From NCBI RefSeq assembly GCF_000315625.1, contig NW_005434653.1, forward strand, positions 39,373 through 103,372: DNA of 64,000 nucleotides, in the 5' to 3' direction. A program made the translations under genes and the position numbers. This document shows, piece after piece, positions 41,041-62,414 of the stretch. Source of the stretch: Guillardia theta CCMP2712 (lineage: Eukaryota > Protista > Cryptophyta). Position 1 is the first letter of the stretch; each line of letters begins with the position of its first letter. Below the pieces are notes generated by a model that saw only the letters and a program-made list of their open reading frames with translations, searched no databases and was not told the origin of the DNA.

Positions 41041-41064
41041 GCGGTTTTGCTAAGGGTTTGTGGA

Positions 41065-42367
41065 ATGCGCCCGCTGATCCTAGTGATGCTCCTGGCGATA
41101 GGGGCAGGGGCAGGAGAGCAGGGGAGGCAGCACATGCGCCATGGTACTCGGGCATCGGTATCTGCTATGGTGGTGTGCCTGCGAGGAGGGACAGAGGAGG
41201 AGGGGAGGGGATCTACACTGCTGCACAAACGCGCGCTGGAGGTCGAGGGGGTGGAGGAGGAAAGTCGCGCTGGCGTGTTGAAGAAGCAAAGGATCCTGCA
41301 GGACAAAACCGAGCAGGACGCGTATGGTCTGGGAAAACCTCCTCCCTCGAAGCACAGAGATGAGATCGAGTCCATGCACGAGGTGGAGCTCTGCACTCTC
41401 GCTGCTGCCACCTGACCCATCCATGCCCCACAGGTCCTCAAGGTTCTCAAGAACGCCAGCAGGCTGGAGAAGATGGCAAAGAGCTCGCTTGAGGACCCGA
41501 AGATCAAGAAGAAGCACAGGAGGTTTGCAACTACCACCCAAATTATCAGAGTCAGCCCTTCATTCCTGGGGGTCCCTTCATTCCCGGAGGTGTACGAGAG
41601 GAGGGTCGAGCTCTGCTTCGACGAGTCCGAGGTGCATGATAAGGAATCTGCTCTCCGTGCTGCCGAGAAAATCATAGAGCAGGTGAGTTGAACCTCACTG
41701 CAACGAATGGAGAGCGGGGGTTTGGAGGGGGGGGGGGTGGCGGAGAGATCGTGGAGCGATTAGTTCACCACTGGCTCGTCCTAGGCTGTTCATTCCTCCC
41801 TTTCTCTCTCTCTCTCTCTCGTACTCCCTCCTCCACTTCTCATCATCTTTCATGGATTTCTGCTTGTCATGTTGTGCGCTTCCTCGACCTCCATGTCATT
41901 AACGTGCATGGGGCAGGGGGAGATGTACAACGTGCGCAGCTATGGAGGGTGGAGCTCTCATTTCCCCTTCTTTGAGAGCGCTGAGCGAAGTTTCCGCGCT
42001 GTTCTGCGCTACGACCCCGACAACGTCAAGTTCATGTCCCTCCTTGGCGCCGTGATCTCCCGCAAGGGGCCTGCACAGCTCGTCGGATCATCGATGGGGC
42101 TGAGGAGGGGGGAGGAGGAAGCAAGGTGTTGGCAGCGGGAGGCGCTGAACCTGACGGGGGAGGCCTTCCTGCGAAGGAGCGAAGACATGTCTCTGCTGCT
42201 GCGGTACATCGCAGTCCTTCGAGACCTCGATATCAACGATGAAGCTGCCAGGTCGCCGCCTGTCGGTTTGTTAGCCTCGCTGTTAACGTTGATATTGCAG
42301 AGAACTTGGCCTGAGGATGCAAGTGGATAAAATGCTGTTTGCAATCCGAGGAGCAGCAGGAGCAACG

Positions 42368-42425
<58 letters not shown>

Positions 42426-44600
42426 TGGCGGGAGCCACGGGAGCAGTGGTAGAGGCAGAAGCAGGAGGAGCAGGAGGAGCTGCGGCAGAGACCAGAGCAG
42501 GAGGAGCAGCAGGACAAAGTGTACCTGGTGGGGAAGTGGACACAGACCTTGATCTGCTCCTCGGAGGACCGAGCAGACCCGTGAAGGTGAAAGATATCTG
42601 CCTCGAACAAATCTTCAACATGGTCAACTACTCTTCGTTGGATGCAACCCTCCTTGCCGAGGTGAGATCATGCGAGACGTGAAGATGTAGAAGATGTTGT
42701 GTTGAGATGCAGCCATGACTAAGAAGGCTGGTGTTCTTCACTTGATACGCACCATGGTCACATAACTTTCAGTTCTACCTGTCGCAAGGGCATTGGCACG
42801 ACGAGCGTGAAGACTTGGCCTCGGCATACACTCAGTTCAAGAAGGCCTATGTCACCATGAACAACAACACCAACGTAGCCTGCAGCTACGGTGAGGCCGC
42901 GCGCCTGCCCTCCTCCCGCCTTGTTTGATCCACAGGCAGGCCACTGCGTCACGTGCGTATACCTGATGCTCAGAGAGCTGCGAGCGAGGATGGCGGAGGA
43001 GATGGACAAACTCGGGCAGACGTTGAGGATAGCAGAGAAGGTGATTGAGGACGAGCAGGAAAGTAAACGAATGACATGCAGAATCAGGGTTACTTCAAGG
43101 GGAAAAGTGGGAGAAGAATCCCCGTGCTGAGGAGAGAGGCACTGATATCGAATGTAGCAAGAAACTCGTTGTCTTTTCCCTGTTGCTGATTGTCTGGGAA
43201 GGTTACAGAAGGGCTGAGTGAGATGGAACTGTTGCGGGTGCGGATGGGAGAAAAGATGAATGAGATGTACCGGGAAGGTTTTCAGGTACTCAATCACTCA
43301 AAGATGGTCGACAAGCGAAGTCCGAGGCCTCTCCTCTACCTCTCAGGTGAGAAGTGGACTGGCTGATACAAACACAGTGGTAGACGAAAGAAACAGATAC
43401 AGAGACAGAGAGTAACAGGAAGAGGAAGAGGGAGGGGGAGAGGGAGAGGGAGGGGGAGAAACAAGGAGAGGGAGAGGGAGAAACAAGAATAGTGATTTGA
43501 TATTTCCGTTCTTCAACTCAATTTCCCCCGGCAGAGCTCGAAATGTTGCATCATTCAGACGATCTGAGCAAGGCAGAAGAATGTCTTCAGGTCCAATGCC
43601 CTTTCCTGCTTGTCCTTCAACCTCCCTGAAGACCCTTGCCAAAATTCTCAGATTTGAATTCGATCCTCTCCCATTCTACTCTCCTTCCTTTCCTCTTCCC
43701 TTCCCCTCTCCTCCCTGTCTCTTTCCTCTCCTGCCCTGTTCCTTCCTTTCCTCTTCCCTCCNNNNNNNNNNNNNNNNNNNNNNNNNNNNNNNNNNNNNNN
43801 NNNNNNNNNNNNNNNNNNNNNNNNNNNNNNNNNNNNNNNNNNNNNNNNNNNNNNNNNNNNNCCTGTCTCTTTCCTCTCCTGCCCTGTTCCTTCCTTTCCT
43901 CTTCCCTTCCCCTCTCCTCCCTGTCACTTTCCTCTCCTGCCCTGTTCCTTGCCCCTTCCCTGCTCTTCTCTTCTCTTCTTCTTTCCTTCCCATCCCTTCT
44001 CTTCAGCATTCACGCCATGATCCCAACAACGCACTGAGTGGTGACAAAACTTTTGACAGCAAGCGCTGGAGAGGGATTCTACCTCTCCTGATATCTTCGC
44101 ATCCTATGCCATCTTGCTTGAGAACATGAAGGACAGTGGAGGTGCGGAGCTTATGTACAAACAAGCTCTTGCTCTGGACCCTACCAATATCCGGTAAAAC
44201 CTCCTGACTATCCTTCTCAGCAGTCTTGCCTCCAACTCTTTGTTGTTCTCCTCCTTTGGTTTTGACTCATTTACAGCGCCCTCTGCGGATATGCTGGTCT
44301 GTTGAAGGCTCTTGGGAAGAGACAAGAGGGTTTACGGCTGTAAGACCCTGTGTCTATCTCTCATCTGTACACAACGTCTCATATCTTCTTTTCCGCGCCC
44401 TTTGCCCTCCCTCCAAGAGGCTAGCTCTTCTCTCACCTATGCCTGCTCCCTGCCCTCTCCATCCCGCAACTCTCCTCTTTCCCTCCTCCCTCCTCCCTCC
44501 TCCCTCCTCTCTCCTCCCTCCTCTTTCTAATGCCTGCTTTTCTGCTCGTCTCTATGCTCTCCCTGTATTCCTTTCTCATGTTCCTCCCAGACTCGCTCTA
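41065..44600 (+). CDS. TPR-repeat protein with signal peptide + LRGG leader, multi-exon; 3' end approximate
   Basis: MRPLILVMLLAIGAGAG...VVCLRGG. TPR-like AERSFRAVLRYDPDNVKFMSLLG, KAEECLQ-QALERDSTSPDIFASYAILL and AELMYKQALALDPTNI-ALCGYAGLL. Confidence 0.8.
43762..43861. other. Assembly gap (100 N) in a CT-rich intronic repeat
   Basis: Run of n. Confidence 0.99.
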
Positions 44601-45139
44601 GCTCGGCAGCAGAGTGAAGGAAGCCAGCTCCTCGCCGACGTTGCCCAGCAAGCCTTCCGATATTGAGACAAGACCGAGGCAACACAAGGTGACAGGACAA
44701 TATCAATGTGCTCTCCTGCAGTTTCCACTATTCGCTCCTTCGGGTGTCTCGAAGCACGTTTTCCTCACTCTTTGTGCCTCCCTCAGGCTGCCATGGCTGC
44801 CTCCCTGGCTTCTACTAGTCATGTTCGTCCTGTCAACTCACTTGCCGGAGAGCGTGACAAGCTGTCGGTATTTAGATTCTTCCTTTTCTTCCGCAGCTTA
44901 TTGCTCGGCTCAGTCATCAGTGCGAGTTATGATCTAGCGCTGAAGCTAACTCAGGTACGTTCTTCACTGCTGCAGCTAGTAGCAATGATACATGTCACCG
45001 AGCCTCCCCCCGCTCACTGCCAGTGACAGTCAGATGAGCTTTACCGTCTCTTGCCTCCTAACTGAGCATCGGAGAGCTGTCGGGCTGCCGCAGTGCAGCT
45101 GATCGGATGCCAGGATTCTCTTCCCCTGCAGCAGCGATC

Positions 45140-46700
45140 CACCGTGACTTCAGCCCCGGCCCGGGCCAAGCGAAAACTGAGCGGCGCCGATGATGGATCG
45201 AGATCTGCCGCCGAGCCAACAACTTTCAAGTTTGCATTCTGAAAGGTAAGCTGCAAGCAAACTGAAAATCATCATAAGAAAGGCCGTTTCATAGACTCGG
45301 AGGAGAGAATCATGTCAGTGCCGCGTTGCCGCAGGAACCGTGAACAACGGACTTCGTACTGATTTTTAACTTGACTTTGAGTAAAGAAAGACTCCAGGAG
45401 TTGGCAACCGCCCGGCACTGCACGGGCCCGAGTCAGGTCCTCGGACAGAACGGGCCCGAACTTGAACTTCGGAAGCCCACTGTGCGGCCCTTGGCGCCGG
45501 ATGCCCGGCTTAGTGACCGTGAGTGACGGCGGTGACGGTGACGGTGCCCGGCGCCCGCCGCGCGCGGGCCGCCGGGGGCTAGTAGAGGCGGGCCGAATCG
45601 ACGTTAACCAGCAGTAACGGTAGTTTCTTGCACCCAATACCCCACCCACCCACCCACCCACCCATACTCGCAGACCCTTCTGAGGTTTGTGGCCCCCACC
45701 TACTTCCACCCCCCTGCCTTCACGGTCCCCAGCGTTTCCCTGAGGATGACCCTACCACCCCACCCCCTTGTGCCCTGCAATGAATAGTGACCCTTGCTTC
45801 AACGTAAACTAACTTGGCAATACCCAGTCAGCGACCGGTACAATTTCAGTACTGCACGGTTAGAGATCACAGACGAGAAAATGTACGAAATTTTGTACCA
45901 TGGTCCACTCTGCCAGTACTTGAAGACTGAAAATCAAATCATTATACATTTGTTTTATTAGGTAGTGGTATCATTTACATTGTTGTAAAGTTAAATAATA
46001 ATTTAGGCTGGTGCGATGTAGGTCACCCCGGCATGTCTTCCAGGCCTGTGGGGGTGGGGTGATATCAGACGATACTGTCGCCGCTGAATGAAGTTACGGC
46101 TCTGGAGGGGTGGGGTGGTTGCGCCTCAGTGCTTCACATGGGTCCCCCGGGGCTATTCCGGTTGAGCATACTACGGGTGGAGACAGACTCTGTTTGGTAC
46201 CCTGTCTAGGTAGGGTACTCCATGAAAGAGCGGGGCATATGGGGGTAGGGTCCCATCAGGGTTGATGAGTTGTGTAGTAGCTCGTCGCCTTAAAGCCCAT
46301 AGGAGGAAGGGTGGGTAGGCTTGCAGAAGGTAGGGGTCAGTGGTGCTTCGGACCGTGTGGTAGCACAGAAACTGTTCGGTTGATGATGGGTGGGGTGGTT
46401 ATTTGTATCACTTTTGGTGTGGGTGGTTGGCATCTAGGAAGGAACTGCCGTACGGTGGGGGGTACCACAATGATGATACCAGGGGTATTCTGAAGCTGAC
46501 GAATAGGGCCGGAGAGTAAGGGATAGGGTAGGGGTGGTACTTCTGGCGGTTTGGCCGGGGGTAGTTTGCCCTGCCTCCGGCTTCTTTCTGCCGTCCCCTT
46601 CTTTTTTGCTTTTTTGGAACTTTTTTTTCTCTGGTACTAACCAGATCACAAACGACATCTTCAGTTGATACTTTTTAGAGAACGCAGCAGTTGTTGTACG
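45140..46700. other. Non-coding motif island (GC core, then TACCC and GGGTA arms) upstream of 46922
   Basis: Same vocabulary; shares a 32-bp segment with the island at 20541. Confidence 0.6.
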
Positions 46701-46921
46701 CAAGATTTTGCCTTGATTTTAGGAGGGATACAGAGGGGGTACAGTGAACACAAAGTCAGTGAATAAGGTCATGAGGATGTTGAAAGAAACATTTCTCTGT
46801 TGATGACACAAGTGAATGGAGTGTGGTCATTGTCTGTCTTTACATATTTCAATAGCCATCAATCTGTCCTTACGCACATGATCGGAATGGAACTTGTTGT
46901 GCCCGCTGACATTGGTGGCAG

Positions 46922-49496
46922 ATGAAAAAGCAATCTTCACCAAACGCCTCGGCGAGTCACGACGAGCCATACAACAACTACATGAAAGCATATCGAGTGG
47001 CAAGGGCAAGGATGAAGACACCCAGTAAGGACGGATTAAGCATTGAGGCGTCGTTTGGAAGCCCGCTGAAGAGAACCATCACGGAATCGAGCAGTAAAAT
47101 CAAAGCTGACGCATCTGGCAGCAAGAAAATGCCTCGAGCAATCTCAGACTCTGACAGCTCAGACGTTGATTCAATCGACTTTGAGATCAGATCTGTCGGA
47201 GATGTTACGATCAAGGAGGTAAGAGTAAGAGTAGCCTGCCCCCTTTCGAATGCTCACCGTTACCCGATAGATGCACCCTCGACGATTGTCTGGTCGGAGA
47301 AACATCCAGTTGTCAGCTAGTCGATTCGGAACAACACCCGACGACATGGTCGGCCAAGATGAGAAGTCAGTCACTGAATCTGAATATGTGGAAGTGAACA
47401 GGTTTGATTTTGTTCTCTTACTGCGATTGCTTGCGACCTCACACACGTCTCGATACCTCAGGGTCAACCAGGAGTTGTCGAGCACGTTGAACTCTCTGCA
47501 GAAACTTTCGAAAGAACAAGACAATGGGGGTGCAAAGCCCATGGAGGTCAGCGAGACAGCAGCTCGCAAACCAGCAGCTGGCGCAAGCAACCCAGACGAC
47601 TCGCAGGAGCATGAAGTCGTGATTGAGGCCGACGTGGGACTGAAAGGTCGAGGATTGTTCAGTCCGATAGATGCCAAGGGAGAAAAGAATCCTTTCAGCC
47701 CTGGGTACGAGAACCATGCAACCGAGGTAGGGGAAGAGCTTGAGATGTCGATGACTCGGCCTGATCTGATGTTGTAGAATGGGACTCGATCGTCGCGCTC
47801 TCGTACGAACCTGAGCTTCCAGGAAGCAAAGGATGGTATCAGAAACGAATTGCAGTCGATGCACCAGCAATTGTCCGTGGCTGACTATGAAAGGAGCTCC
47901 AACGACGAAAGCTCGAGAGTGGAACAGCATCTGTCAAAGGTCAAGTCACAACTGAATTCATCCGTCGAAGACCAGGAGCAGTGGCAGCATTCTGATCAGG
48001 TCCTCTCGCCTACCTCCTCACACAGCCCTGCCTGGTCCTCGAAGAAGGAGAAGCTCAAGGCCGAGCTCCAGAAGTATACAGCCCAGCTCCGGATGGCCAA
48101 GAATGCCAGGAAGAACAGAGAGAGCGAGGATCTAGCGCGCATTCAGCACGAGCGGACGACAGATGAAGTCTCTTCCGCGCAGATCAACATGGAGCTTGTC
48201 AAGGACGAAGACCCGTACTCGTTCGTCGGCTCTGACAAAGAGAACCGGGAGGAGGGGATGACAGACTTGGAGCTGAGCAGCAGAGATCACATTGCAAAGC
48301 AGCAGGAGTACATCAAGGATGAGATCAACCAGCAGCTCGAGAGCCTGGAGAGGCTCGAGGGAGAGACGAAGAAGAGCGTCAGCAAACACGATCAGTCGAG
48401 CTCTTTTGCTGGCGTGTTTGGCATGAACGATCCGGCTCCCTTGGCTGAATCCACCAACAAGATCTCAGTCAAGTCTTCTTCCTTCGGCAACGCTGAAGAC
48501 AAGACCATGGAGATAGCGGGGGATGCGCCACCAGAGCACGCGCAGCCTGTCTGCTGTGGGTTTCTAGCGGCGTACTCGAGGCTGCCGGTCTCAGGCATCT
48601 CCTTCGACTGGAGGGACACCAAGAGTGGAGCGAGGAACCGGCTCCTCGTGTCCTTCAGCTACGTCTTTGTCTATGTCGCCATCATCGTCCTGTTCGCCTT
48701 GCTCTCCTTCATCTTCGGGCTTTTCACTCCCTGGGGTTTTCCCACCTGGGCCATCACGCTGCCGTCGCTCTTCTTTGGCTTCTTCTACGTCAAGGCTCAG
48801 CCCCGGCAGGTCAGAGGTGAGTTCACGTTGCCCGGGCCCGTGCAGGCCTTCTGGGTCTTTTGCAGCTGGAACACGGCCATGACCTTTCTCGCTGCTATCC
48901 TCTCGGCCAATGCAGCTCGGTCAATCCAGCCGCTGCTGTCAACGAGTTACTGTGACGGCAATGCGGTGGTGTACAACTCCACGAGCAGCAGCATTGAAAC
49001 AACGTATCATTCGCCCTCCGACGTGCTCAACCTGGCCGTGTGTGAATCATGGAACATGTGCAAAGGAGACGGGATCAAGATGGCATCTTGCGGAGGCATG
49101 TATGGCATGAACGTGTTCAACACCCTCTTCTTCCTCTTCTCCTCCTTCGCATTTCTGTTCTGCTTGATCTACTTGTACTACATCGTCAACGTCCGACACC
49201 GCGAGTACCTCGAGGCTCTCCATGGCAAGTTGACAACCTATGATGACCTCACCCTGGGCGCTTGCTGGGACAAGTTCCGCCAGTCAGACTTCTTCCTCTT
49301 CATCACCGGCGACACGTCAGCGTTCGAGAAGGAGTCAGTGGAGAGCGAACAGGAGGAGCGTGATCATGGCCATGGCCATCAACAGCTGGAGATCGTGACG
49401 CACGAGCACATCAGCATTGGCGACTCGAGAAACTCGGCGAGAAGCTCTCGGGTCATCGACCCGAAGCTCCAGAGCCCATCTGAGAACATGTGTTGA
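46922..49496 (+). CDS. Hypothetical polytopic membrane protein (long hydrophilic/coiled-coil N-terminus, several C-terminal TM helices); start uncertain
   Basis: Three short introns join the upstream ORFs to the 548-aa ORF. Hydrophobic blocks FSYVFVYVAIIVLFALLSFIFGLF, WAITLPSLFFGFFYV and NTLFFLFSSFAFLFCLIYLYYIV; Cys-containing loop. Confidence 0.8.
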
Positions 49497-49682
49497 GACA
49501 TGTGCAGCAACAAAATGTGTTAAGCCTTTGAAAGTTCATTTGTAAACTTAAGAGAAGCGTGTCGTCTGATCCCCAGCCTCTCCTCGCTCCGTCCCCACCT
49601 AGACGATGGCAGCGGCGAAATGCGCCATGCGGGAAGGAAGGTAGACCTGCAAGCATGTGTCAGGGCGAGCGGAGGTGACAGA

Positions 49683-52281
49683 TCAGGTCACATCATGCTC
49701 CAGGTTCCACTGGTCAAGACGAGGATCATAGCTCTCGATGGCTGAAATGGCATGAGTCAAGCAAGACAGGCTTGCTGGAGATCAGCCGAGGTCTCACCCG
49801 AAAGATACTTCAAGCCATCGTATCCTCCGATGGCACAGAGCTTGTGATTCAACTGCAGAAGCCTCTCACCACCTCGAGGGCCCTCTACCCTGCAACTCAC
49901 CACATGCAGCGCCAACCCGCTTCTCTTCTTCTGCATCTTAGCCACCAGCTGCCAGGTGTTTGTCTTGGGGTCAAGTTTCTCAACCGTTGCGAGGTCGTGC
50001 TTGCTGTCGAAGCCGCCAGCGACATACAGAACGCCATCCAAGACCTGCGGCCCGGCGGTCAGTCCGACCGGTAGCCTCGATCCCATTAGGCGGCGAAGCT
50101 TCACTTACCGCCATGGCATGGTCGCGACGAGCGTGATTGAGAGGAGGCCCCTCGACCCACTTCACTGAGCCAATAACATCAGAGAAACGCAACAGCTGAG
50201 AGAGCAGGGGGCGTACTTGAGACTGAGTCAAAAATCTCCACTGTGTTCAAGACCTGGCACGGTGTCAACTGGCACAGCACATTCATGCTGGTAGAGTTAC
50301 GTTCTTGCCGTCGAAACCACCGACAGCGTAGAGATGATCTCCAAGGACAGCAAGGCGGGCGCCGGATCTAGCATGCTGTGAAAGTGTGAGCTGGGAGACG
50401 GACGAAGAGGAGAACAGGTGACCGGCATCGGAGCCATCTGTTGCCAGACTTGCATGGTACGATTGAGAAATTCACAGCTTGACAGATGCCTGGGGCAAGT
50501 CAACGACACCGGCACAAAGTCTCTTCAATGTCATTACTTGTGCCCATCGTATCCACCAGCAGCACAAATCATTCCTCCCAAGTTTGCCATCCCAAAGCTT
50601 CCCCTGGCTGTGAGCATTGGCGGCCCCTTGGTGGAGACGTTAGTAAAGGCGTCAAGTTGTCAACATTCACTCATACCTTCTTCCATGAGTTGCTGCTCAG
50701 ATCAAACATTTCAACCGATCGGAGGTACTTGTGACCGTCCCATCCCCCAGCAACGTACACGATCCCGTCAGCCTCTGCCGCCGATACTTGCTTCCTTGCG
50801 ATGTGCATTTCGTCGAGAACGAACCCTTCTCCCGTGATGCTGTCGATCATGAGCGCAGACTTGAGCGCATCTGAATTCTTTCCTTTCCTTCCTCCGGCGC
50901 ACACCAGATACCTGCCCTTGCTGCCAAGGCGGACTTTAGTCTGAGAGCTCTCCAGCATCTGCTTCTGCTCAGGAGTGCTGCCCACGTAGGCAATGGCTGC
51001 ATTCAGCATCGCCTGCCACTGTGGGTTGTTGGCCAAGTGCTTGTGGATAAGGGGCGCAGCAGCCACTTTCTTCGCCAGGGTGTCGAGGGGGAGGAGGCCG
51101 AAACGGATCTGACCCATGAGGCGGAGGAGGCTGGAAGATCGGTTGGCCTCGTTGAACTCCACCCAGCGGATGACGGAGTCAAAGATGACCTTCTCGGACT
51201 CGACGAACAAGTCGTCGCTCCCGATGATCTCATAAAGGGCGTCCTCAGTGAGGTCGTTGAAGCTCTGAGACTTGCTCACTGCAACGAAATCGTGCATGAT
51301 GAACCTGTTTGCGGCATCCAGGAGCTCGTGGCATTCGAGCGTCTTGCCAAGGTGCCGCATCCTGAGGGCGTTGGAGGGCTTCAGGTCTTTCATCAGGTGG
51401 AAGTAACAAGTATCCTTCAATCCGGAGATTCCGAGCTTCTGGCTGATGCCAAGGATGTCAGGGAGCTTCTCCTCCGAAACCTTGATCTTGCGAGCATAGA
51501 TGTAATCGAACACGACCGTCAGACTTTCACCATCCATGCTCTGCATGTCGAGCTCCTTGGTTCCCGCTGGAAGATTTTCGAGCATTTTTTTCAGCTCGGG
51601 GCTCGCAGCTGCAAGGATTGCCTGGTGGGCTGCGATCTTCACACCCCCTTGCCCCTTGATGGTGATGTCTATCAGCTTCGAAGATTCCTGCAGCTCCCGC
51701 AGGCCCTTGGCAAGGTATTGGACATGGCCCTCGGATGAGATGGTGAGGATGTTTTGGCCCTCAGCCTCAGTCTCGTCGCGCGTTTCAGTATCGCGGAGAG
51801 CGAGCGGCTTCTTTCCCTTGCCGAAGGCATGGTCATAGTCGAAGTACTCATGGGCTGAGCTGTCATCGTCGTAGCCTTCCTCTCTGTTGTGATCTCTTTC
51901 ATCCAGAGCCTTCGCGTCCTGGTCTTCGTCCGAGTACTCGGTCTCGTCGTACTCCGTCGAAGTGTAGGACGACGTCAAGCTATCGGCAGAATCTGACATG
52001 TCTGTCACGTCATCGCTGTCATCATCGTACTTGGAGTGCTTCGCTTTCCTCTTGCCTCCTCGCAGCCTCTGCAAGCACGGCAGTCCCAGGCTGCCCATCA
52101 ACCCAGGGCCCTTTTGATCCTTTGTCAGCTCATAGAGCATTCCGAATCTGGATTGGATCCTCTTGCTGTGAACCATGCGAGCATCGTTGATCAGCATGTT
52201 TGCAGCGCCATGGTGCTCGGCTACAATCAGCGCCACCTGCAGCGAGCACAACAACACAATCCGAGGGATCGCAAGCAACAT
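49683..52281 (-). CDS. BTB-BACK-Kelch (KLHL-like) protein with signal peptide + LRGG leader
   Basis: BTB: LIDITIK...IAAHQAILAAASPELKKM...FDYIY. BACK: DDLFVESEKVIFDSVIRWV...QIRFGLL. Kelch repeats YVAGGWDG, CAAGGYDG, YVAGGFDS, CAIGGYDG and SYDPRLDQW. Confidence 0.95.
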
Positions 52282-52819
52282 CGCAAACAGATCAGCCAGA
52301 CGCTATGAAAATCGTGAAGCCTCTCTGCTCAAACAAACGCAACTTGGTCAGTAAACAATCAAGCTATGAATAGGTTTGAGTAAGAATGTGTTCGTGCGTG
52401 TTGTCTCTCAAGGCTGTCGATACTGTTTACACTGAAAATCATATTTCTTTATAGTTTGTTCTACGCAATCTGGCTGCGAGCATTCTCACGCAGCGATGTG
52501 TTCGTTCCTCCACCATTGGAATATCTAACATTTCAATTACATGCTTAACTGCTACTTATCATCTAACAACATCCTGATCTTTTGTATTGCACGTCTGCTG
52601 TTCGCTGCAAAGGTCCCTCGGTCCAAAAGAAGAATTCTTTGACGAACATGGAATCTACTCCCTCCCTATCTTAGCCTTAGTCGTCCTTGTAGGAACGATT
52701 CTATCATCTAAGAGACATTCAGAGACAGGATTCTTTCTTCCTTCCACCATTCCCTCTCCTCCGCCGCTCAGTCTTGCATCCCTCGTTCTTTTCCTCGGCA
52801 TTTTCGAATTCCGCCAAGA

Positions 52820-54560
52820 CTACCTACCCCAAATGACCCCTGCGACGTTCCTACCCCTGCGATTCCTAAAGAAGGCCCTACCCAGACCTGTTCGATGGAT
52901 TTTATTTGATGTACCCGTCTTTATCAAGACCCACCCCGTTGAAAACCAGAAAATAAGAGGAAAAGACCCGGATATTCTCCAGGCTCGGAAACCAAGATGT
53001 GGTAGGGGTAGTGTGTCTCCCCAGAGAACCCTCTCGATAGCATCAAAGATCTCTGAATAGGTAGCCCTACCCCATCAACGACCACCCCTACCCTGAATTT
53101 TTTTGCTTCACTTTCCGCCCCATCACGAGGCTCCCGCTCAATTGACCCCACCTGGTATAATCTGAACATTTACTTAGAAAGGTACCGGTACTTGATCCGC
53201 CAATCCAATCCAGATTTGGGATCGGCCCCTCAAATGAACTACTTGGAAATTGAATACTTTCAAATCATTCTCCCAATATGTTAACTTAACCCGGTGATCC
53301 GACGGACTCGCCGGCCCGGGAGTCCCAGGCCCGGCCCGGCCCGTGCCGCCGGGGCCATCCCGGACTGCGGCGGGCCCGATCGCCACCGTCTCAGAGTCTC
53401 GACTCAGACCGGACGGTCGGACGGCGGGCCCGGGGTACCGCTCTCAATTGACCCCTGTGGCGCAGTAAACCCGTGGCACCGTGACGCCACCGTCACGGCG
53501 TGTCACCGTCAGTGACTGCCACTCACGGGGGGGCACGGTGGCGCCACGCCGGCGGCGCGGCGGCGGACCGTCTTGAAACAAGCCGGCTCAGCCTGGCTAG
53601 TACGCGGCCGGTAACCCGGGCCCACTGCCTGCATCATGACTCATGATGACCGGGCATCCAGACCGTACTCGCCATGACTCGGCCATGGCCGAGTCGGACC
53701 GGGCCGTCTCCGAGGTCTCGCTCGGACCGGCGCCGGGGTCACGAGGCTCCCGGCGTCCGACGGTCGGCCCGGAGGCTGCCCGGCAGAGTCACGCCGAGTC
53801 GCAACGGCGGGCCGTCGCCGAGTGGCCGCGCGAGGCAGTCCGAGTGGCACTGCGGCGGCCGCACCGGGGTCCGACCGTCAGTCCGCCGAGTGAGTCAGTG
53901 AGAGTTCAAGTTCAACGGTTAGCGTAAGTTAGCGACTTCCGAAGTTCACTGACTGAGTCAGTCGAGGCCGGCCCCCCGGGCCCGGCGGGGCGCCGCGGCG
54001 CCCCCGCGGCACTCAGTCCGATGGGGACGGTGACAGCCTGCCGCAAATCAGTGATTGAAGTTTACCCCGGCCTACGGAAGTCCGCGGGTCACCGGGTTAC
54101 ACCATATGGGTTCAAATCTCAATGATTCAAGGTTGATTCGACAATGCCCGGCCGGCCCGGCCCGGGCCCGCCCGCGGCGGGCCGGCCCCGGGGGCCCCGC
54201 GACTCCCGGCGATGACGTCATCTGCCACCCATCAGTGATGGACTATTTTTATTAATGATTGGCAGACCGTCCCACGCCGTTCGTGCCCGGACGGTGGGCG
54301 GCCACAAAGTCTTCTCAATGTTTGGAGGCGGCGTAATGAGCAAGGCTGGTACGGGGTTTGGGTGAGACTAAAATGTTTTAATTTGTACACAAATCTTCTT
54401 TTGTTGTTTTTAAAGAGGTACTATTGTGTTGATAAGTGAATAATTATACACTAAAGTTGTACCATGAATTGATATAATGTTTTATATCTATATCTTTATT
54501 GAGGTACTTGGGGAAAATCAGGGTGGAAACCAGGGGAACGTGGTCGGGTGGGGGCAGGTT
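52820..54560. other. Largest non-coding motif island, between divergent genes 52281(-) and 54869(+)
   Basis: TACCC arm, then a ~1-kb GC core of ccgg, ggcc, gagtc, gtcac, ccgtc, cagtg and aagtt words. Confidence 0.65.
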
Positions 54561-54868
54561 GCGGAAGGAAAATGGACAGACAAGAACGGAAGAGGAAGGG
54601 AGGGATAGAAGAAAAGGAGAAGTGAGACTCGATCGGGAGGATGACAGTGATAGGAACAAAGTTCGCCAGTAGGGAGAACAGCAGGATAGCAAGGAAGGTA
54701 ACCATGTGCAGGGCAGGCTCGAAACGGTACAAGCGACATGAAGAGTTGGTAGCGCGCAGGAGGAGCAAGAGCAGGAGAGGGAAATCGGAACGTGAAATCA
54801 CATCCGAGACGATCACATCACACGATACATGCACGTGAAGCAAGCATCTGACCGGCTCGTTGCGCAGC

Positions 54869-56142
54869 ATGAACAATCTACGAGGGTATATGAGGTCGAG
54901 TCTGCAGGCGACAAAGAAAGTCATGCACCTGCCCAATGTCGCGGCAAGGAAACCCAGTGAGAGGAGGGCACCGAATGCTCCGGTGCCAAATGCTCTCTCG
55001 CGCATCAGCGTCTCTCAGCTACTTCCAAGACACAACAAGCAGGTCGAGGTTCCTCGAATGACCCACGAGCCCCAGCCCTTCATTCTTCCCCAGTACTTCC
55101 GAGAAGGAGCCCCCCTCCCCCTCACCATCCCCAAGCACTTCACCATGCAAGAGGAGAGCGTCAAGTTCGACCCCGAACGTCACCTCAACATCTGCAAGGA
55201 GATCGCCGTCTCAAGATCGCATGGGAGCGTCTACACCAAACCCTTCCGGTTGCTGAGCGAGGAGGGCGTGGAGGTCCTGCGGCGAATCATCGAGGCCAAC
55301 GAGGAGCATGCGAAGCAGATGGTTCGCTCACCTAAGTGTCTCCGCGGCCTCGGCTATCGCTCCCAGTTCGTGCGGGACCTGTCGACATACAGGCCCCTCC
55401 TCGATCTCCTTTCCTCCCTCGCAGGCGAGCCCATCTCCCTGCATGCTCATGGGATGAACATCGGGTAAGCGGGAGGAGCGGGCCGTCTGATCCCCCTGCT
55501 GACCTTCAGAGCAGGCACACCAACTTCGGGGAGGTCGGGGGCGCAGCAGCTGAGAAGTGGCACGTGGACTCAGTCGACTACGTGCTCATCGTCATGCTGT
55601 CGGACCCGGTCGGCATGCAGGGAGGAGACCTGCAGCTCTATCTGCCGCAGGCAGCAGCTGACGCTCACTCGTCCTGGGACCAGCTCTCGGGGGGCACTGC
55701 GAGGAAGGAGGACGTCCGTAGCCTCCAGTTCCCCTCCGCAGGGTACGCGACGTTCGTGCAAGGCTCCAAGATCTTCCATACGGTCTCCCCTCTCCTCGCT
55801 GCTAAGGGGCCCCGCATCACCCTCGTCAACTCCTTCACGTCCAACAATGTCTTCAAGCCTGACTCCACGCGCTTCTCCTCCTACAAGGACACCTTCCTCG
55901 ACCCCCCCGACGTCGTCGACATCGAGTTCTCCCGCCATCGCGCCGCCAGGGCCATCGGGCAGCTGGAGCATCTCCTCAACGCCTCCTGGGACACGCCAGC
56001 GGTCGAGCTTGCGTCTGTGTTGCAGCTGGCGGGACAGGAGCTGCTGATGACGTCACGGCTACTGCGAGGGGAGGAGAAGGACATGCTGAGCTGCAACTCA
56101 GCAGAGCAGAAGAGGATCGGAGGAGACGTGAAGGCAGGATGA
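54869..56142 (+). CDS. 2OG-Fe(II) oxygenase-superfamily protein, one intron (~55465-55515)
   Basis: WHVDS (HxD), VMLSD..MQGGDL, QGSKIFHTV (distal His) and RITLVNSF. Confidence 0.85.
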
Positions 56143-56317
56143 GGGCAACGAGGAGGATAGGGAGGGCGGGGGCATGTAAGATACGTTCTGGTTATTGATT
56201 GAAGGGATTTTAGTGCGGAAAGAATAACAAGGGCGAAAGAATAAATGAAACAAGAGGGGCCATGGCAGCCGATGCTGATCACCATACTGACATGTTAATG
56301 TTCTGCCGCCAAGAACA

Positions 56318-58397
56318 TCACCCTGGAGCAGAGGAAATAACATGCAAGCAATGCTCACCTGGCACGTAGTCGTCTAAGGACTTGTCTGGATCTACACGGT
56401 AGAAAGAGTTCGCTACCCGCTCTGAGCAGCAAGTCACGCTAGTCACGGAGCAGCAGCAAGTCAGCTCTGACCTGCTTGGATGTCTCTCAAGGTCAGCGCT
56501 CGATCTCTTATCCCGTATGGCTGCCCGTCCTGGTGCCCCAAAGAGCTCAGGGGAGAAGCGAGGAGAAGACAAGCGAGAGGAGCATGGAAGGAAGCAGAGT
56601 CCCAGGACCAACGACAGAGAGGGCGGACGACAGGAACGACGAGGTCGAAGAGGGAGCTGGAAGTAGCCAGAGATGGGAAGGTATCTCAAGACAAACAGCG
56701 TGCACGACGAAGAGAGGAAGGAACGAAGCAAGAGAGGAGGAGGTAGAGGAATAGCGGAAGTAAAGGAGAGGGGGTGAGAAAGGAGCGAGCGAGGAGCTGG
56801 AGCAGGCATGAAGGGAGGAGGGATTGGAGGGAGAGAGGAGGAGAATTTCTCACCTCTCCGAGATTAGACAAGTAATCCTCCGAGGGGATCTTGACCTGAC
56901 CGCAAGTCACATCCCCGCGCGGGCCCAACGTCAGCTCACGTCAGAGAAGAGTCCCTGAATGTCGTAGTCCGTGTGCAGCCTGTGCTCCCTAGGCGCAGCT
57001 TGCTCTGTGGACTGAGCCTGAAGATGGAGGACAAGTGAGAGGAGGGCCGGAGATAGAGGAGGGAGAGGAGAGGAGAGGAGGGGAGAGGAGAGGAGGGGAG
57101 AGGAGAGGAGAGGAGAAACCTGAGAGAGTGGAGGAAGGAGGGAGGAGAGGAAGGGGAAGCTGGAGGAGAGCAGCAATGGGAGAATCTTACCACGAGATCA
57201 TCGTGAAACAAATTATCTCCAGAGTCATCGTCATGCGGAACGCTCACAAGATCGGAGGAAGACAGGTCCGCGCTCTCTGTCCGCACGTACACATCCTGCC
57301 CATGTATTGCATCCTCTTCCGAGTCTCCTTCGACTGTCAAAAAAAGTGTTGTCACGGCAAAGCAGAGTTTCCGTCTAACTGTAGCTCCTCCTCCTCCTCC
57401 TCCTCCTCCTCCTCCTCCTCCTCCTTCTCGCTCTGAATCTCTTCCTCTTCCTCACCTTTGTCAGGAAACCCTCGGTACGTGTCTGATTCTAATTCGTGCG
57501 CACGCGCCAAAGTTTGAGGGGTCTGAACAAGAAAGTCACATGCACCCCAAACATCATCTCAGCTCTGACCGAGCTCACTAGAGCATCCCTCCCGAGCGGA
57601 AACCACCTCTCCCTCCCCTTCTCCTCCACCGCCGGCTGCTGCACCACCTGACGCATCAATGGATCAGAAGGAGGGCAGGGGGAGAGGGAGAGGGCGAGCT
57701 CAGCTCTGACCTCGGCGTCAGACGTCACCCTATCCAGCAGCTCCGCCAGGTCGTCCATGACTCTGATCGCCCCCTTGTCCTCGCCCTCCATCCCCGTCGG
57801 AACATCCGACCAAGACATCTCCTCATGGTACTTGCTGGGAAGAAAAGGGCGAGCTCGCTCAAACCCTGGCGAACCACTCACGGACATGTCCACCTCATCC
57901 CCCCCCTCCTGCTTCTCCTCGCCCCCTTGCCCTCTCTGCGCCTTGCCCTCCTCCCCGTCATTCTCAGCTGCTGAGCTGTTGACATGGGAGTTCGTCGTTG
58001 CCTCTCTTGTCTGATTCAGTGCTAGCTGCAACATCTTCACATGACTCCCATGCCTCGGCTTGCCCCGGATCAGCTCCTTCAGCGCAAGCTTGCTGCCAGA
58101 TCCTTGAACCAAAGTTTCCCTCCCGATCCCTCCCCCCACTGCAGCATCTGCGCGACGACGCATCGACATCTCAGCTGAAGTCTTCAACGATCGCACGAGC
58201 GAGTGGGCAAGGAACTTAGCAAGCATCCACCTCCTCTCTCCTGATTTCTGCAGCAGAGAGTCTCGTTGCCACCCTGCCACAAGGGACCCTCCGGCACGCT
58301 GCTGCCCAACATTTTTGCCCGCTCTATCGAGGTTCGCTCCTACGACCAACACAGCAACAAGGAGCAGCACAGCAGCGCCAGTGGCTGTCCTCGCCAT
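56318..58397 (-). CDS. Hypothetical secreted or membrane-anchored protein, multi-exon
   Basis: MARTATGAAVLLLVAVLVVGA and a long first exon. Downstream exons SEEDAIHGQDVYVRTES..., IPSEDYLSNLGE and RVANSFYRVDPDKSLDDYVPG*. Confidence 0.7.
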
Positions 58398-59136
58398 GGA
58401 GCGTTTTGTCCTTGCGGGACATTTCGCTACAACGATGCTCCTGTCCCCCACCAAGCACTCGGGCAAGAGAGGAATGGAATGATCTCCCAGGATCATCGTG
58501 CAGGTCACTTGGACGACGAGAACTCATGCAGTGGGCAAGACATCTGCGCCGCAATGTCACGTCAAAAACATGCGAAGGTTGACGCAGACAATTGTAACAA
58601 GACAACGAGGTTATCAAGCAGTATTCGTACGGCCGACAACACTTTTTTCTTGAAGCTCGTCATTTACATCCCTCCCATTCTTGCTTGTTCCTCTCTCCAT
58701 GAGCCTCTTTCACGCCTTCATCTTCACTTCCAGCACCTCTTCCTCCTCTCCTTCTCTTCTCGTCCTCCTTCACTTCCTTTTCTTTCTCCTCCCTTTATCA
58801 CCATCATCATCTCTCTTCCCTTCATCTTCATCTTCATCTTCCTCTTCTCTACTCCTCCCTCTCTTTCATCTCCCCGTCGCTCTCCGTGAAATCTTCGTTA
58901 GTTTCGCCATACAATGCCCGAATTAGCGACTACCCCTATACCCCACCCCATGAATTATCCTCGTTTCGACCGGTGAGTAATTGCGATGAACGGGTACTAT
59001 TCAAATGTCTGAAGGGGGTAGTACGAACAACAGTATCGGTTACTGTACGTTACAATTGTAACGTATCGATTTGTGTAACCGCCCACGCAAGCGCGCTCTA
59101 ATGATTCTAGAAGGGCCCACACGCGGCAAGGCGGCG

Positions 59137-61614
59137 ATGGAGGAGAGGAGGAGGCAGAGGCAAGGGAAGATGATGAGGATGATGCTCTCCATCCTCCTCC
59201 TCCCTCTTGCCTCCATGTCTCAGACTCTTCCTTGCGTCTCGACCAGACTGCGCCAGGCTCCTGTCCTGCGCGATATGCTCGGAGGTGAGGATTCGCCTGC
59301 GATGAGCGAGAAACCGGTCGAATTCATGAGGCATGCGCTTCATGACGGATCGATCGCGGACCCTGACTGCTTCTCCACCTTCCCCACCTGATCGTCCTGA
59401 TCGCGTTGTGACTTGCTTCGCAGAAACGGGATCGTGCACGCATGGATCTTTGTTGCTATTGGAAGACTGGAACAAACGTCTTTCGCATCCTTGGCTCCTG
59501 AAACTCAGAGGAGGAGGAGGAGGAGGGAAGGACAAGGCAACTCGTACCCCTGAGGTGAACACCCATAGAAGATGTTTGCTGTTGACTGTGAGACGCAGAG
59601 CAAAGGAGCAGCCGGACGTTCCAACAACCGATCCCCGTCCAGTTCCCTCCAGTCAGAAAGTGCTTCTCTCATCGAGTCCACGAGCGAGACTGAAGAGAGC
59701 TCGGGAGGAGACGAGGACAGCGACCATGCTGCGGGCATGGACGAGGTCGGTGCCTTCACCTAGGAGCGGATTCTGTGCATGACAGCCTGGCTAGGAGCAA
59801 CTTCGATCCAAGAAGCAGAAGCTGGAAGATGAGCTGAGAGAACTCGAGGACTGGTGACATGCCCTGAGCCTCTTGGTTGGTGCCATGACAGCTCTGCTGC
59901 ATTGCCAGGGAGAAGCGTCTGAACGAACAGAAGGGGAGCGGCAAGGGAGGGCAAGGCGGAAAGAAAAAGGTGTGGGAGACATGCTTGTCTCTGTGATGCC
60001 AGTCGGATGGCGTCCGCTGCTGGCTGACACGAGTGATTACGGCAGGAGAAGCACAAGGGCAGCGCTCGGAAACGAGGGTCTGGCGAGGTGAGGGCCTGCT
60101 GAGCCTGCGATGTTTGTGCATGCTCACCTGCTGGTAGCAGGAATCGTCCGACTCGGACGACAGAGAATCTTCAGAAGTGTCTGACAGTGACCCGACCAGC
60201 GAAGAAAGATCCAGCAGCGAGTCCAGTGAGAGGAACAGGAAGTCCCAGGTGAGAGGATGGGATTACTCGACGTGATTGCTGACCAAGAGAAGGGAAAAAC
60301 GGGAAGGAAGCCAGCGAAACGGTCCAACGATGACCGATCGAGAACTTCAAGGGACACGCTGAGCAAGAAATCAAGTGATCGCAAGTCCAGTGAAAGGAAG
60401 GGAGACGACGAAAAGCGCAAACATTCTGAGCTGCATCAATCATCCAAGAAGAAGCGAAATCATCCAGGGGACTCTAGTGAAGGTTCTGACGAGTCTGAGT
60501 CGATGTCAAGTGAGTTTGATGGGAGCGAAAGCTCCAGCGCAAGTGCAAGGAGCCGCAACTTGAAAAGGTTAAGGACAAGTGGTGTCGAGGAAAACCAGCA
60601 CCCATCAGCATCCAAGCGAAATTCAACCAAGAAGAAGAGGCAAGAGGGGAAGAGAGGAAGGGGGTACCATGAGGATACCAGCGAGGAAACTGATAGTGAT
60701 GTCGGTGAGAGAAAGAAAAGCACTTCCGGCCATGGACGAGGATCTGCTACGAGCTCAAGAAGGAACAAAGGGCTCTCAACATCCAAATCCCGCCCCAAAC
60801 GTCATGAGAGGGAAGAAAGTTCAGAGTTGAGCGAGGAGAGCAGGTCAAGTGAAGAAGAATCGGGGTCATCCAACGATAGCAGCAACTCGGACGAAGATGA
60901 CAGCGAATCATCGGGGGAGACACGGCGGCAATCCAAGAGGTCCAGAGAATCCGGAAAGAAGTTGGCGGTGCGGAAGAGCAACGTCCAGTCTTCATCAGAA
61001 GAACGAGGAGGTAGTGAAAGCGAGTCAGGAAGGAGCGAGAGCGAGTCTTTGAAAGAGAGGGAGAATCGGGGATCGAAGAGAAACCGCGGACATTCGAAGA
61101 AGGATGACAGCGCGTCAAATGATGACAGCAGCACGAGCTCATCTAGGATGCAGGATGATGATGATGAGGAGGACGAGGAGAGCCGGTCCAGGAGCGGGAG
61201 CAGCAGATCGAGTGAAGATGAGAGCGGGTCTAAGGAAGATCGCAGCAGTTCATCATCAGCATCGAGCCGGTCGGACAAGAACAGGAGCAGCTCATCCGAA
61301 GACGAGGAGAGCAAGTCCAGGAGCGGGAGCAGCGGGTCAGGAAGCAACGAGTCGAAGGAGGAGACTGATTCCAAGGACGACGAGGACGAGGACGAGGACG
61401 AGGAGGACGAGGAGGAGAGCCGGTCCAGGAGCGGGAGCAGCAGATCGAGTGAAGATGAGGGCGGGTCTAAGGAAGATCGCAGCAGTTCATCATCAGCATC
61501 GAGCCGGTCGGACAAGAACAGGAGCAGCTCATCCGAAGACGAGGAGAGCCGGTCCAGGAGCGGGAGCAGCGGGTCAGGAAGCAACGAGTCGAAGGAGGAG
61601 ACTGATTCCAAGGA

Positions 61615-61666
<52 letters not shown>

Positions 61667-62325: not shown

Positions 62326-62366
<41 letters not shown>

Positions 62367-62414
62367 AAGGAGGAGGATGGGGAAGAGAGCAGCAGCGAGT
62401 CGTCAAGCAAATAA
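59137..62414 (+). CDS. Signal peptide + LKLRGG leader, Ser/Asp/Glu/Arg-rich low-complexity repeat protein; frameshift at ~61901
   Basis: Phase-consistent exons MMRMMLSILLLPLASMS...DMLG-ETGSC...WLLKLRGGGGG...TPE-SKGAAG... lead into ORF 60257-61933. The same peptide repeat resumes in another frame up to 62414. Confidence 0.75.
61178..62400 (+). repeat. Coding tandem repeat, five ~230-250-bp units (~79 aa each)
   Basis: Units start at ~61178, 61415, 61667, 61901 and 62130. Unit length varies mainly in the (GAGGAC)n tract. Confidence 0.95.

What the first reader, a model, noticed from the sequence alone, without database searches (positions are those of the whole stretch)
41065..59515. Three unrelated genes share a signal peptide + linker + LRGG (ubiquitin-tail mimic) leader: candidate deubiquitinase-cleaved targeting presequence
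Seen: the TPR protein has MRPLILVMLLAIGAGAG...VVCLRGG (LRGG at 41179-41190, ending at residue 42). The BTB-BACK-Kelch protein has MLLAIPRIVLLCSLQVALIVA...LQRLRGG (52054-52074, minus strand, ending at residue 76). The S/D/E repeat protein has MMRMMLSILLLPLASMS...LLKLRGG (59498-59515), and this leader is contiguous only after a phase-1 intron is removed. In all three, the sequence becomes highly charged and low-complexity right after GG. Known: ubiquitin ends in LRLRGG and is cleaved after GG by deubiquitinases. Algae with red secondary plastids import signal+transit-peptide proteins into the periplastid compartment through the ubiquitin-dependent, ERAD-derived SELMA translocon. TPR and BTB-Kelch proteins are normally cytosolic. 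Inference: LRGG is a processing site by which a DUB-like protease removes the presequence from proteins sent to a cytosol-like second compartment. I cannot confirm from here how far this has already been described.
Basis: partly seen in the sequence, partly recalled or inferred. Interest (0 to 1): 0.85.

Follow-up and report, generated by a model that had tools for sequence, protein, structure and literature searches.

The report
Ubiquitin-tail motif ending periplastid targeting leaders
In the cryptophyte alga Guillardia theta, three unrelated genes in this window, and many others, end their import leader with LRGG or LRLRGG, the last residues of ubiquitin, which suggests that a ubiquitin-type protease trims proteins entering the remnant cytoplasm around the plastid.

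Summary
All three leaders sit at the stated coordinates. An orthologous transcript supports the BTB-Kelch start. A close relative's DNA supports the first gene's start. Spliced transcript contigs from two studies confirm the phase-1 intron of the third gene. The window is Guillardia theta CCMP2712, scaffold JH992985.1.

The motif is not chance. RLRGG is the only invariant block in BTB-Kelch leaders from five cryptophyte taxa that are otherwise 22-27% identical. An unrelated aldo-keto reductase family keeps LRGG in the same way. A marine cryptophyte contig has two more cases, where LRGG sits directly before the ancestral start Met.

Published G. theta periplastid (PPC) reference proteins carry it at the leader/mature junction: EF-1alpha, 14-3-3, RRM1, cyclophilin, Ubc8, Cdc48 and starch synthase. 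Counts are 7 of 17 signal-peptide-bearing PPC entries against at most 2 of 101 cryptophyte plastid proteins. Unselected positions P6 and P5 also match ubiquitin L71 and R72. Some diatom PPC proteins have LRGG or IRGG too.

Cleavage after GG by a DUB-like enzyme fits but was not shown. One relative has LQGG, and some reductase leaders have Phe at +1. No searchable paper describes the motif. First-stage readers noted it 19 times elsewhere in this genome.

The parts
41065..41115 (+). Gene 1 signal-peptide-like segment (MRPLILVMLLAIGAGAG)
   Evidence: mean hydropathy 3.2, no charge. The start is supported by relative L001: there is a 2-nt indel just upstream of the ATG, and only 3-nt indels after it.
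41116..41178 (+). Gene 1 transit-peptide-like linker, basic, 21 aa
41179..41190 (+). Gene 1 LRGG (CTG CGA GGA GGG)
   Evidence: It reads LQGG (CGA to CAA) in a 91% identical relative.
41383..41433 (+). Gene 1 intron 1 (51 nt, GT..AG, phase 0), inferred
   Evidence: Inferred from the reading frames; not checked with reads.
43762..43861 (.). Assembly gap inside a CT-rich repeat tract, probably intronic
   Evidence: copies at 43682-43744 and 43888-43950 are 98% identical.
44057..44194 (+). TPR-repeat exon; its link to leader 1 is unverified
   Evidence: TPR_17, E=1.8e-7.
52219..52281 (-). Gene 2 signal-peptide-like segment (MLLAIPRIVLLCSLQVALIVA)
   Evidence: The same start is found in the complete MMETSP ORF P0001.
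52066..52218 (-). Gene 2 transit-peptide-like linker, 51 aa
52054..52065 (-). Gene 2 LRGG, part of the invariant RLRGG
50671..52053 (-). Gene 2 mature part in this exon: basic and acidic tract, then BTB, BACK and the first Kelch repeat. Further Kelch repeats lie in downstream exons.
59170..59284 (+). Gene 3 exon 1 coding part, with hydrophobic core LSILLLPLA. In-frame upstream ATGs at 59101 and 59139 also lie inside the mRNA.
59285..59423 (+). Gene 3 intron 1 (139 nt, GT..AG, phase 1)
   Evidence: the joint is seen in contigs of runs X1 and X3, which come from two studies.
59424..59554 (+). Gene 3 exon 2; LRGG at 59504-59515, followed by a GGA run
60257..62420 (+). Gene 3 Ser/Asp/Glu-rich body, including a 237-bp tandem array at 61152-62372
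   Evidence: No Pfam family was found.

Best explanation
LRGG, with fuller consensus [L/M]-[R]-L-R-G-G, is a conserved motif at the C-terminal end of the transit-peptide-like part of bipartite leaders. These leaders take nucleus-encoded, cytosol-type proteins into the periplastid compartment (PPC, the remnant red-algal cytoplasm) of cryptophytes. The three window genes belong to this class.

Proposed mechanism:
1. The signal peptide brings the protein into the ER lumen around the plastid and is removed.
2. The transit-peptide-like segment carries it through the ubiquitin-dependent SELMA translocon.
3. In the PPC, a cysteine protease of the deubiquitinase or ubiquitin-like-protease type reads the leader's end as a ubiquitin tail and cuts after GG. 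This releases the mature protein and discards the leader, together with any ubiquitin attached to it.

Shown: the motif, its position at the leader/mature boundary, its conservation, and its association with PPC-type rather than stromal proteins. Inferred: that cleavage occurs, that it is after GG, and the class of enzyme.
For: (1) All three leaders are present and transcribed as read.
(2) Conservation against diverging leaders. BTB-Kelch orthologs from a Hanusia-type MMETSP transcript, Geminigera, a Tara contig and a 25%-identical relative all keep RLRGG, the only invariant run in the first 200 residues. Aldo-keto reductase orthologs and paralogs keep LRGG with unrelated leaders.
(3) Boundary position. 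LRGG is followed at once by the ancestral Met of the aldo-keto reductase and the M1 aminopeptidase. In G. theta PPC EF-1alpha it is followed by GKEKHH, the normal EF-1alpha start after Met removal.
(4) PPC specificity. 7 of 17 signal-peptide-bearing G. theta entries of the published PPC matrix carry it. These include 14-3-3, RRM1 and cyclophilin, for which the passages I read name GFP-fusion localisation in a diatom. At most 2 of 101 cryptophyte plastid proteins carry it (Fisher 1e-5).
(5) Ubiquitin mimicry beyond the selected four residues. P6 is L/M/I/V in 12 of 13 families and P5 is R/K in 8 of 13, matching L71 and R72.
(6) The PPC has its own ubiquitin system. The G. theta PPC ubiquitin precursor itself needs cutting after ...RVRGG|M and ...LRLRGG.
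(7) The PPC leader peptidase is postulated but unidentified (PMC5756292).
(8) The three leaders share no DNA similarity outside the motif codons.
Against: - There is no direct cleavage evidence (no N-termini).
- Canonical DUBs normally need the ubiquitin fold, and no ubiquitin domain is detectable in the leaders (Pfam at E up to 10).
- ptDUP is reported absent from cryptophytes.
- A 91% identical relative of gene 1 has LQGG, so R is not essential, at least there.
- Several aldo-keto reductase leaders may have Phe at +1 after the signal peptide. By the usual rule that predicts stromal targeting, not PPC.
- Many PPC-matrix entries lack the motif.
- At site 3, RGG runs into a GGA microsatellite.
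- SignalP could not be run.
Confidence: 0.6

Rival explanations
1. LRGG is the recognition site of a different, non-DUB leader peptidase, such as an M16 enzyme related to the stromal or mitochondrial processing peptidases. Such an enzyme would cut L-R|G-G (Leu at -2) or L-R-G|G (Arg at -2).
For: Diatom stromal transit peptides are cut with a strong Leu preference at -2, and Met is often at +1 (PMC3774753). G. theta phycoerythrin alpha leaders were modelled the same way. Some LRGG leaders have Phe at +1, which is typical of stromal import.
Against: M16 sites are degenerate, whereas here four residues are invariant and two more match ubiquitin. At most 2 of 101 cryptophyte plastid-set proteins have LRGG. 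GKEK follows GG in EF-1alpha, and the ancestral Met follows GG in two enzymes, which places the boundary after GG.
Confidence: 0.17
2. The motif is not cleaved. It acts as a sorting, retention or docking signal. For example, it could be bound by a ubiquitin-tail-binding component of SELMA or the PPC, or serve as a flexible hinge, while the leader is removed elsewhere or kept.
For: The motif is associated with PPC proteins without any cleavage data. The PPC contains ubiquitin-handling factors.
Against: Its exact placement at the start of the mature domains fits a cut site better than a docking site. Known ubiquitin receptors bind the globular surface, not the tail (my own knowledge, not tested here).
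Confidence: 0.1
3. The motif is a historical relic. Leaders were copied from a PPC-targeted ubiquitin gene (signal peptide, transit peptide and ubiquitin tail) by exon shuffling, and LRGG persists without present function.
For: The G. theta PPC ubiquitin precursor has a signal peptide, a transit peptide, a degenerate ubiquitin-like domain ending in RVRGG, and then ubiquitin.
Against: Leaders show no similarity outside the motif at DNA or protein level. The motif stays invariant across genera while the rest of the leader has diverged to 22-27% identity, which indicates purifying selection.
Confidence: 0.05
4. Chance, or a side effect of GGA/GAG-rich simple sequence in this genome.
For: The site 3 motif abuts a (GGA)n run. 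Six-frame LRGG counts in the window, 11 in 128,000 codons, are only modestly above my rough estimate from amino-acid composition, about 6.
Against:: P is about 4e-5 for 3 of 10 leaders in the window and about 1e-11 for 7 of 17 PPC entries. The motif is also conserved in orthologs.
Confidence: 0.02

Closest known systems
Bipartite targeting sequences of periplastid (PPC) proteins in algae with red complex plastids: a signal peptide plus a transit-peptide-like segment lacking an aromatic residue at +1, imported by SELMA
   Same: An N-terminal hydrophobic signal-like segment is followed by a 20-55 residue basic or hydroxylated linker. Residue +1 after the likely signal cut is E, E or Q at the three sites. 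The cargoes are cytosol-type proteins. The published G. theta PPC proteins carry the same LRGG motif.
   Different: Descriptions and predictors (ASAFind 2.0) use only the 25 residues around the signal-peptide cut. A defined C-terminal motif of the leader is not part of the known signal, and no paper I could search mentions it.
C-terminal tail of ubiquitin, ISG15 (LRLRGG) and NEDD8 (LALRGG), cut by DUBs and ULPs from linear precursors
   Same: The consensus [L/M]-R-L-R-G-G is identical to ubiquitin residues 71-76. The residue after GG is variable and is never Pro in the 13 families. The PPC's own ubiquitin precursor must be processed at the same sequence.
   Different: No ubiquitin fold precedes the tail (Pfam negative). 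The leader is 25-55 residues of low-complexity sequence.
Tail-only LXGG proteases: coronavirus papain-like protease and adenovirus protease, consensus (M/I/L)XGG|X
   Same: These recognise a short linear LXGG site without a ubiquitin fold and also act as DUBs. The LQGG variant in the relative fits LXGG. This comparison is from my own knowledge, not from a tool.
   Different: They are viral enzymes. No such protease was identified here, and no homology is claimed.
Stromal processing peptidase site of diatom transit peptides (Leu at -2, Met at +1; Huesgen et al. 2013)
   Same: It is a leader-end motif with a conserved Leu, often lying just before the ancestral Met.
   Different: It is far more degenerate, has no GG, applies to stromal proteins, and involves a metalloprotease in the stroma.
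Acidic C-terminal part of PPC-targeting leaders in chlorarachniophytes
   Same: A charged stretch lies at or after the leader end on PPC proteins of a nucleomorph-bearing alga. This comparison is from my own knowledge.
   Different: The plastid is of green origin, there is no SELMA, and no LRGG is known. Here the acidic tract is not general.

Membership tests
PPC-type bipartite targeting sequence (cryptophyte) | N-terminal ER signal peptide | tested here: inconclusive
   All three sites have an uncharged hydrophobic core of 9-15 residues after a basic start, followed by small residues. SignalP or TargetP were not available. Site 3 may start at upstream ATGs, which would give a long n-region.
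PPC-type bipartite targeting sequence (cryptophyte) | Transit-peptide-like segment without Phe/Tyr/Trp/Leu at +1 after the signal cut | tested here: inconclusive
   The likely +1 residues are E, E and Q at the three sites, and E or A in BTB orthologs. Cut sites are judged by eye only. Some aldo-keto reductase leaders with LRGG may have F at +1.
PPC-type bipartite targeting sequence (cryptophyte) | Cargo of cytosolic or nuclear type | tested here: met
   BTB-BACK-Kelch. Other LRGG carriers: aldo-keto reductase, M1 aminopeptidase, EF-1alpha, 14-3-3, RRM, cyclophilin, Ubc8 and Cdc48.
PPC-type bipartite targeting sequence (cryptophyte) | Experimental localisation to the PPC | not testable with these tools
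   There is none for the three window genes. For other LRGG leaders (14-3-3, RRM1 and cyclophilin in the passages I read), the ASAFind 2.0 supplement cites GFP fusions in P. tricornutum (Gould et al. 2006). EF-1alpha, Ubc8 and starch synthase sit in the same G. theta matrix block, but I did not read their evidence rows.
Ubiquitin / ubiquitin-like C-terminal processing site | LRGG tail, extended match to L71-R72-L73-R74-G75-G76 | tested here: met
   P4-P1 are invariant by selection. The unselected positions also match: P6 is L/M/I/V in 12 of 13 families and P5 is R/K in 8 of 13. RLRGG is exact in gene 2 and its orthologs.
Ubiquitin / ubiquitin-like C-terminal processing site | Ubiquitin beta-grasp fold N-terminal to the tail | tested here: not met
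   No Pfam family was found in four leaders, even at E up to 10. The linkers are 21-55 residues. So these are not ubiquitin-like proteins; at most they mimic the tail.
Ubiquitin / ubiquitin-like C-terminal processing site | Hydrolysis of the peptide bond after GG by a DUB or ULP | not testable with these tools
   This needs N-terminomics or in vitro cleavage.
SPP/MPP (M16) presequence cleavage site | Degenerate site with Leu at -2 (diatom SPP) or Arg at -2/-3 (MPP); stromal or mitochondrial cargo | tested here: inconclusive
   L-R|G-G would formally fit Leu at -2. Against this, the motif is far more specific, is rare in the cryptophyte plastid set (at most 2 of 101), and the boundaries point to a cut after GG.

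The most novel reading that the evidence does not exclude
The long-postulated but unidentified peptidase that removes leaders from periplastid proteins is a deubiquitinase-type enzyme. In cryptophytes, and for some proteins in diatoms, the leaders have evolved a ubiquitin C-terminal tail (LRLRGG). One cut after GG then removes both the leader and the ubiquitin attached to it during SELMA translocation. This would couple import, deubiquitination and maturation, and would stop onward import into the stroma.
Probability: 0.4. Interest if true: 0.9.

Novelty: new variant of a known kind. Interest (0 to 1): 0.8.

Why it matters
How periplastid proteins are separated from stromal proteins, and how their leaders are removed, is an open point in the cell biology of complex plastids. 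Reviews postulate a leader peptidase that nobody has identified. They also note that cryptophytes lack the one known periplastid deubiquitinase, although they have periplastid proteasomes.

A ubiquitin-tail motif at the leader end has three consequences:
- It gives a concrete, testable candidate mechanism and enzyme class.
- It gives a simple sequence mark that could sharpen prediction of the cryptophyte periplastid and nucleomorph proteome. Current predictors look only near the signal-peptide cut and recover about a quarter of known PPC proteins.
- It is a possible example of an organelle presequence processed by the ubiquitin system.

The motif sits in published sequence sets without being remarked on in any text I could search.

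Tried and rejected
1. The leaders are not degenerate ubiquitin domains. Pfam finds nothing at E up to 10.
2. The three leaders do not share a leader cassette. DNA similarity is confined to the motif codons.
3. The LRGG at 32168 (+) lies in non-coding-looking sequence. The one at 7461 (-) lies at the start of an internal exon of what looks by eye like a short-chain dehydrogenase (no domain search run). Neither is a leader.
4. G. theta AKR P0089 is a leaderless paralog. An upstream ORF with MKGG is out of frame, and I left it uninterpreted.
5. The metagenome scan for BTB-Kelch loci gave only five short contigs, one of them informative (L009).
6. A first, loose hydrophobicity test had a 22% background and was not significant. 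I replaced it with a stricter test.
7. The representative search with gene 1 exon 1 found only one close relative, so there is no deep conservation test for gene 1.
8. RNA raw-read run X15 gave almost no coverage. The evidence comes from Logan contigs whose RNA label is a guess, but they are spliced.
9. Gould et al. 2006 (MBE) is not held, so I could not check whether those authors noticed the motif.
Full report
**What is there**

All three leaders are in the sequence as described.
- Site 1 starts at ATG 41065 and reads MRPLILVMLLAIGAGAG, then a basic 21-residue linker, then LRGG at 41179-41190.
- Site 2 starts at ATG 52281 on the minus strand. LRGG is at 52065-52054 (residues 73-76). One ORF (50671-52281) carries BTB, BACK and Kelch domains.
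- Site 3 starts at ATG 59170, and LRGG at 59504-59515 is in frame only after an intron is removed.

The window is Guillardia theta CCMP2712, assembly GCA_000315625.1, scaffold JH992985.1, at about 39373-103372.

**Gene models**

- Site 2. A complete MMETSP ORF (P0001, 86% identical over the first 200 residues, from a Hanusia-type relative) has the same start and the same LQRLRGG.
- Site 1. A metagenomic relative (L001, 91% nucleotide identity) is collinear from 42 nt upstream of the ATG. It has a 2-nt indel just before the ATG and only 3-nt indels after it, which supports this start. There the motif reads LQGG, by a CGA to CAA change.
- Site 3. Spliced contigs from two studies (runs X1 and X3) join 59284 to 59424 (139 nt, GT..AG, phase 1). 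They continue with the exact expected length across the masked GGA repeat to a second intron at 59555-59598. The mRNA also contains in-frame ATGs at 59101 and 59139, so the true start may lie further upstream. The hydrophobic core is unchanged either way.

**The gap**

The gap at 43762-43861 lies in a CT-rich tract between 98% identical 63-nt repeats, 2.57 kb downstream of leader 1. It does not touch the leader. However, the only Pfam TPR hit (44057-44194) lies beyond it. Calling gene 1 a TPR protein therefore assumes a join that I could not test.

**More than chance**

- I compared LRGG with the other 11 orderings of L,R,G,G in long six-frame ORFs of the window plus a 30-kb cryptophyte contig. 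LRGG is preceded by Met plus an uncharged hydrophobic core in 4 of 9 cases. The other orderings give 2 of 37 (Fisher p=0.009; binomial 4e-4 against a 4.5% background). Two more of the nine are intron-split leaders.
- With the window's own background rate, 3 of about 10 signal-like starts carrying LRGG has P of about 4e-5.
- The three leaders share no DNA similarity beyond the motif codons.

**Conservation**

- BTB-Kelch orthologs come from Geminigera cryophila (P0003, 48% identical overall), a Tara Oceans cryptophyte contig (P0004, L002) and a 25%-identical relative (L009). Their leaders are only 22-27% identical to G. theta, yet all end in RLRGG. This is the only run of invariant columns in the first 200 residues.
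- On the Tara contig, two more unrelated genes have a hydrophobic leader ending in LRGG, directly before the ancestral start. One is an aldo-keto reductase (...SMALRGG|MEMPPIMYGTAWKK). The other is an M1 aminopeptidase (...SRLSLRGG|MAEEKPELLP).
- Reductase relatives keep LRGG with unrelated leaders: P0034 from Geminigera, plus P0035, P0066 and P0162 from unidentified environmental or assembled sources.

**Link to the periplastid compartment**

The supplement of ASAFind 2.0 (PMC12136025) holds the full sequences of its PPC scoring set. The G. theta entries are:

| Protein | Junction |
|---|---|
| EF-1alpha | ...SMLRLRGG\|GKEKHH |
| 14-3-3 | ...ALRLRGG\|VDGE |
| RRM1 | ...PLRLRGG\|FRGD |
| Cyclophilin | ...ALRLRGG\|GLPY |
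| Ubc8 | ...IPLRGG\|ANPT |
| Cdc48 | ...MRLRGG\|NVAM |
| Starch synthase | ...MSLRGG\|AGSD |

- At least 14-3-3, RRM1 and cyclophilin are listed there as localised by GFP fusion in a diatom, citing Gould et al. 2006.
- That makes 7 of 17 signal-peptide-bearing G. theta entries. The entries without the motif look ER-type, were inferred by BLAST, or have F/W at +1.
- In the same paper's set of 101 cryptophyte plastid proteins, LRGG occurs in at most two entries. One of these is, by my reading of its sequence, an FBPase-like protein, and its leader has no aromatic residue near the likely signal-peptide cut. Fisher p=1e-5.
- In EF-1alpha, the residue after GG is the normal mature start. This places the boundary after GG.
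- Several Thalassiosira PPC proteins also have the motif: sDer1-1 (DLRGG), thioredoxin h (SLRGG), sSec14 (QIRGG), and the two Cdc48 copies (GRGG, ARGG).

**Ubiquitin mimicry**

Across 13 independent cryptophyte families chosen only for LRGG, P6 is L/M/I/V in 12 and P5 is R/K in 8. The consensus is therefore L-R-L-R-G-G, which is ubiquitin residues 71-76.

The G. theta PPC ubiquitin is itself made as signal peptide, transit peptide, a degenerate ubiquitin-like domain ending in RVRGG, and then ubiquitin. An enzyme that cuts after this tail must therefore work in the compartment.

The leaders are not ubiquitin folds.

**Mechanism and its limits**

My best reading is that a DUB or ULP-type protease in the PPC cuts after GG and removes the leader. 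Reviews postulate a PPC leader peptidase without identifying it, and they note that cryptophytes lack ptDUP (PMC5756292; PMC12412216). Short LRGG peptides are used as DUB and viral-protease substrates (my own knowledge).

Points against:
- There are no cleavage data.
- Ordinary DUBs need the ubiquitin fold.
- One relative has LQGG at site 1.
- Some reductase leaders may have Phe at +1.
- Many PPC proteins lack the motif.

The main rival is an M16-type peptidase cutting L-R|G-G. That would fit the diatom rule of Leu at -2 (PMC3774753). It does not explain a six-residue match to ubiquitin, or the motif's rarity in stromal proteins.

**Novelty**

Ten full-text searches found no paper that links LRGG with Guillardia, periplastid, transit peptide or plastid. 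The ASAFind text does not mention the motif. Gould et al. 2006 is not held, so prior notice in subscription literature cannot be excluded.

First-stage readers of this scan noted the same motif 19 times elsewhere in this genome, on eL22, an importin, Rpn13 and others. I did not test those loci.

Noticed in passing
L001:1-853 against window 54292-55167 (-), and L001:1466-1909 against window 41023-41461: In a 91-93% identical relative, the 5' end of the leader-1 gene lies about 600 bp from sequence that is 13 kb away and inverted in G. theta. This is either a rearrangement between close relatives or a chimeric metagenome contig.
   Followed up: partly
window 57457-58545 (-): A spliced neighbouring gene (introns 57523-57569 and 57646-57708 seen in transcript contigs) has a strong signal-anchor-like start, MARTATGAAVLLLVAVLVVGA. 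It has no LRGG (QRAGG instead) and no Pfam family.
   Followed up: partly
window 61152-62372 (+): A 237-bp tandem array (5.1 copies, 92% matches) encodes the Ser/Asp/Glu-rich repeats of gene 3. The protein resembles acidic nucleolar phosphoproteins, so it may be a nucleomorph protein.
   Followed up: no
window 59101 and 59139 (+): Two in-frame ATGs upstream of the assumed start of gene 3 lie inside the transcript contigs. The signal-like core may therefore follow a long basic n-region.
   Followed up: partly
ASAFind 2.0 supplement (PMC12136025, file 19), entry gt_155024: G. theta PPC-targeted ubiquitin is encoded as signal peptide, transit peptide, a degenerate ubiquitin-like domain ending in LRVRGG, and then canonical ubiquitin. 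This is a possible evolutionary source of the tail motif.
   Followed up: no
L002:7978-8298, and proteins P0162 and P0153: Aldo-keto reductase leaders that end in LRGG may have Phe right after the signal-peptide cut (AQS|F, CFG|F, AVS|F). The usual rule reads this as stromal targeting, which conflicts with a PPC-only reading.
   Followed up: partly
L012:17611-17622 (+), G. theta scaffold JH992985.1: Another hydrophobic stretch followed by FLRGG lies on the strand opposite to the called gene. It could be a missed leader exon.
   Followed up: no
window 43682-43950: The assembly gap sits between near-identical CT-rich 63-nt repeats, so its true length is probably set by repeat collapse.
   Followed up: yes
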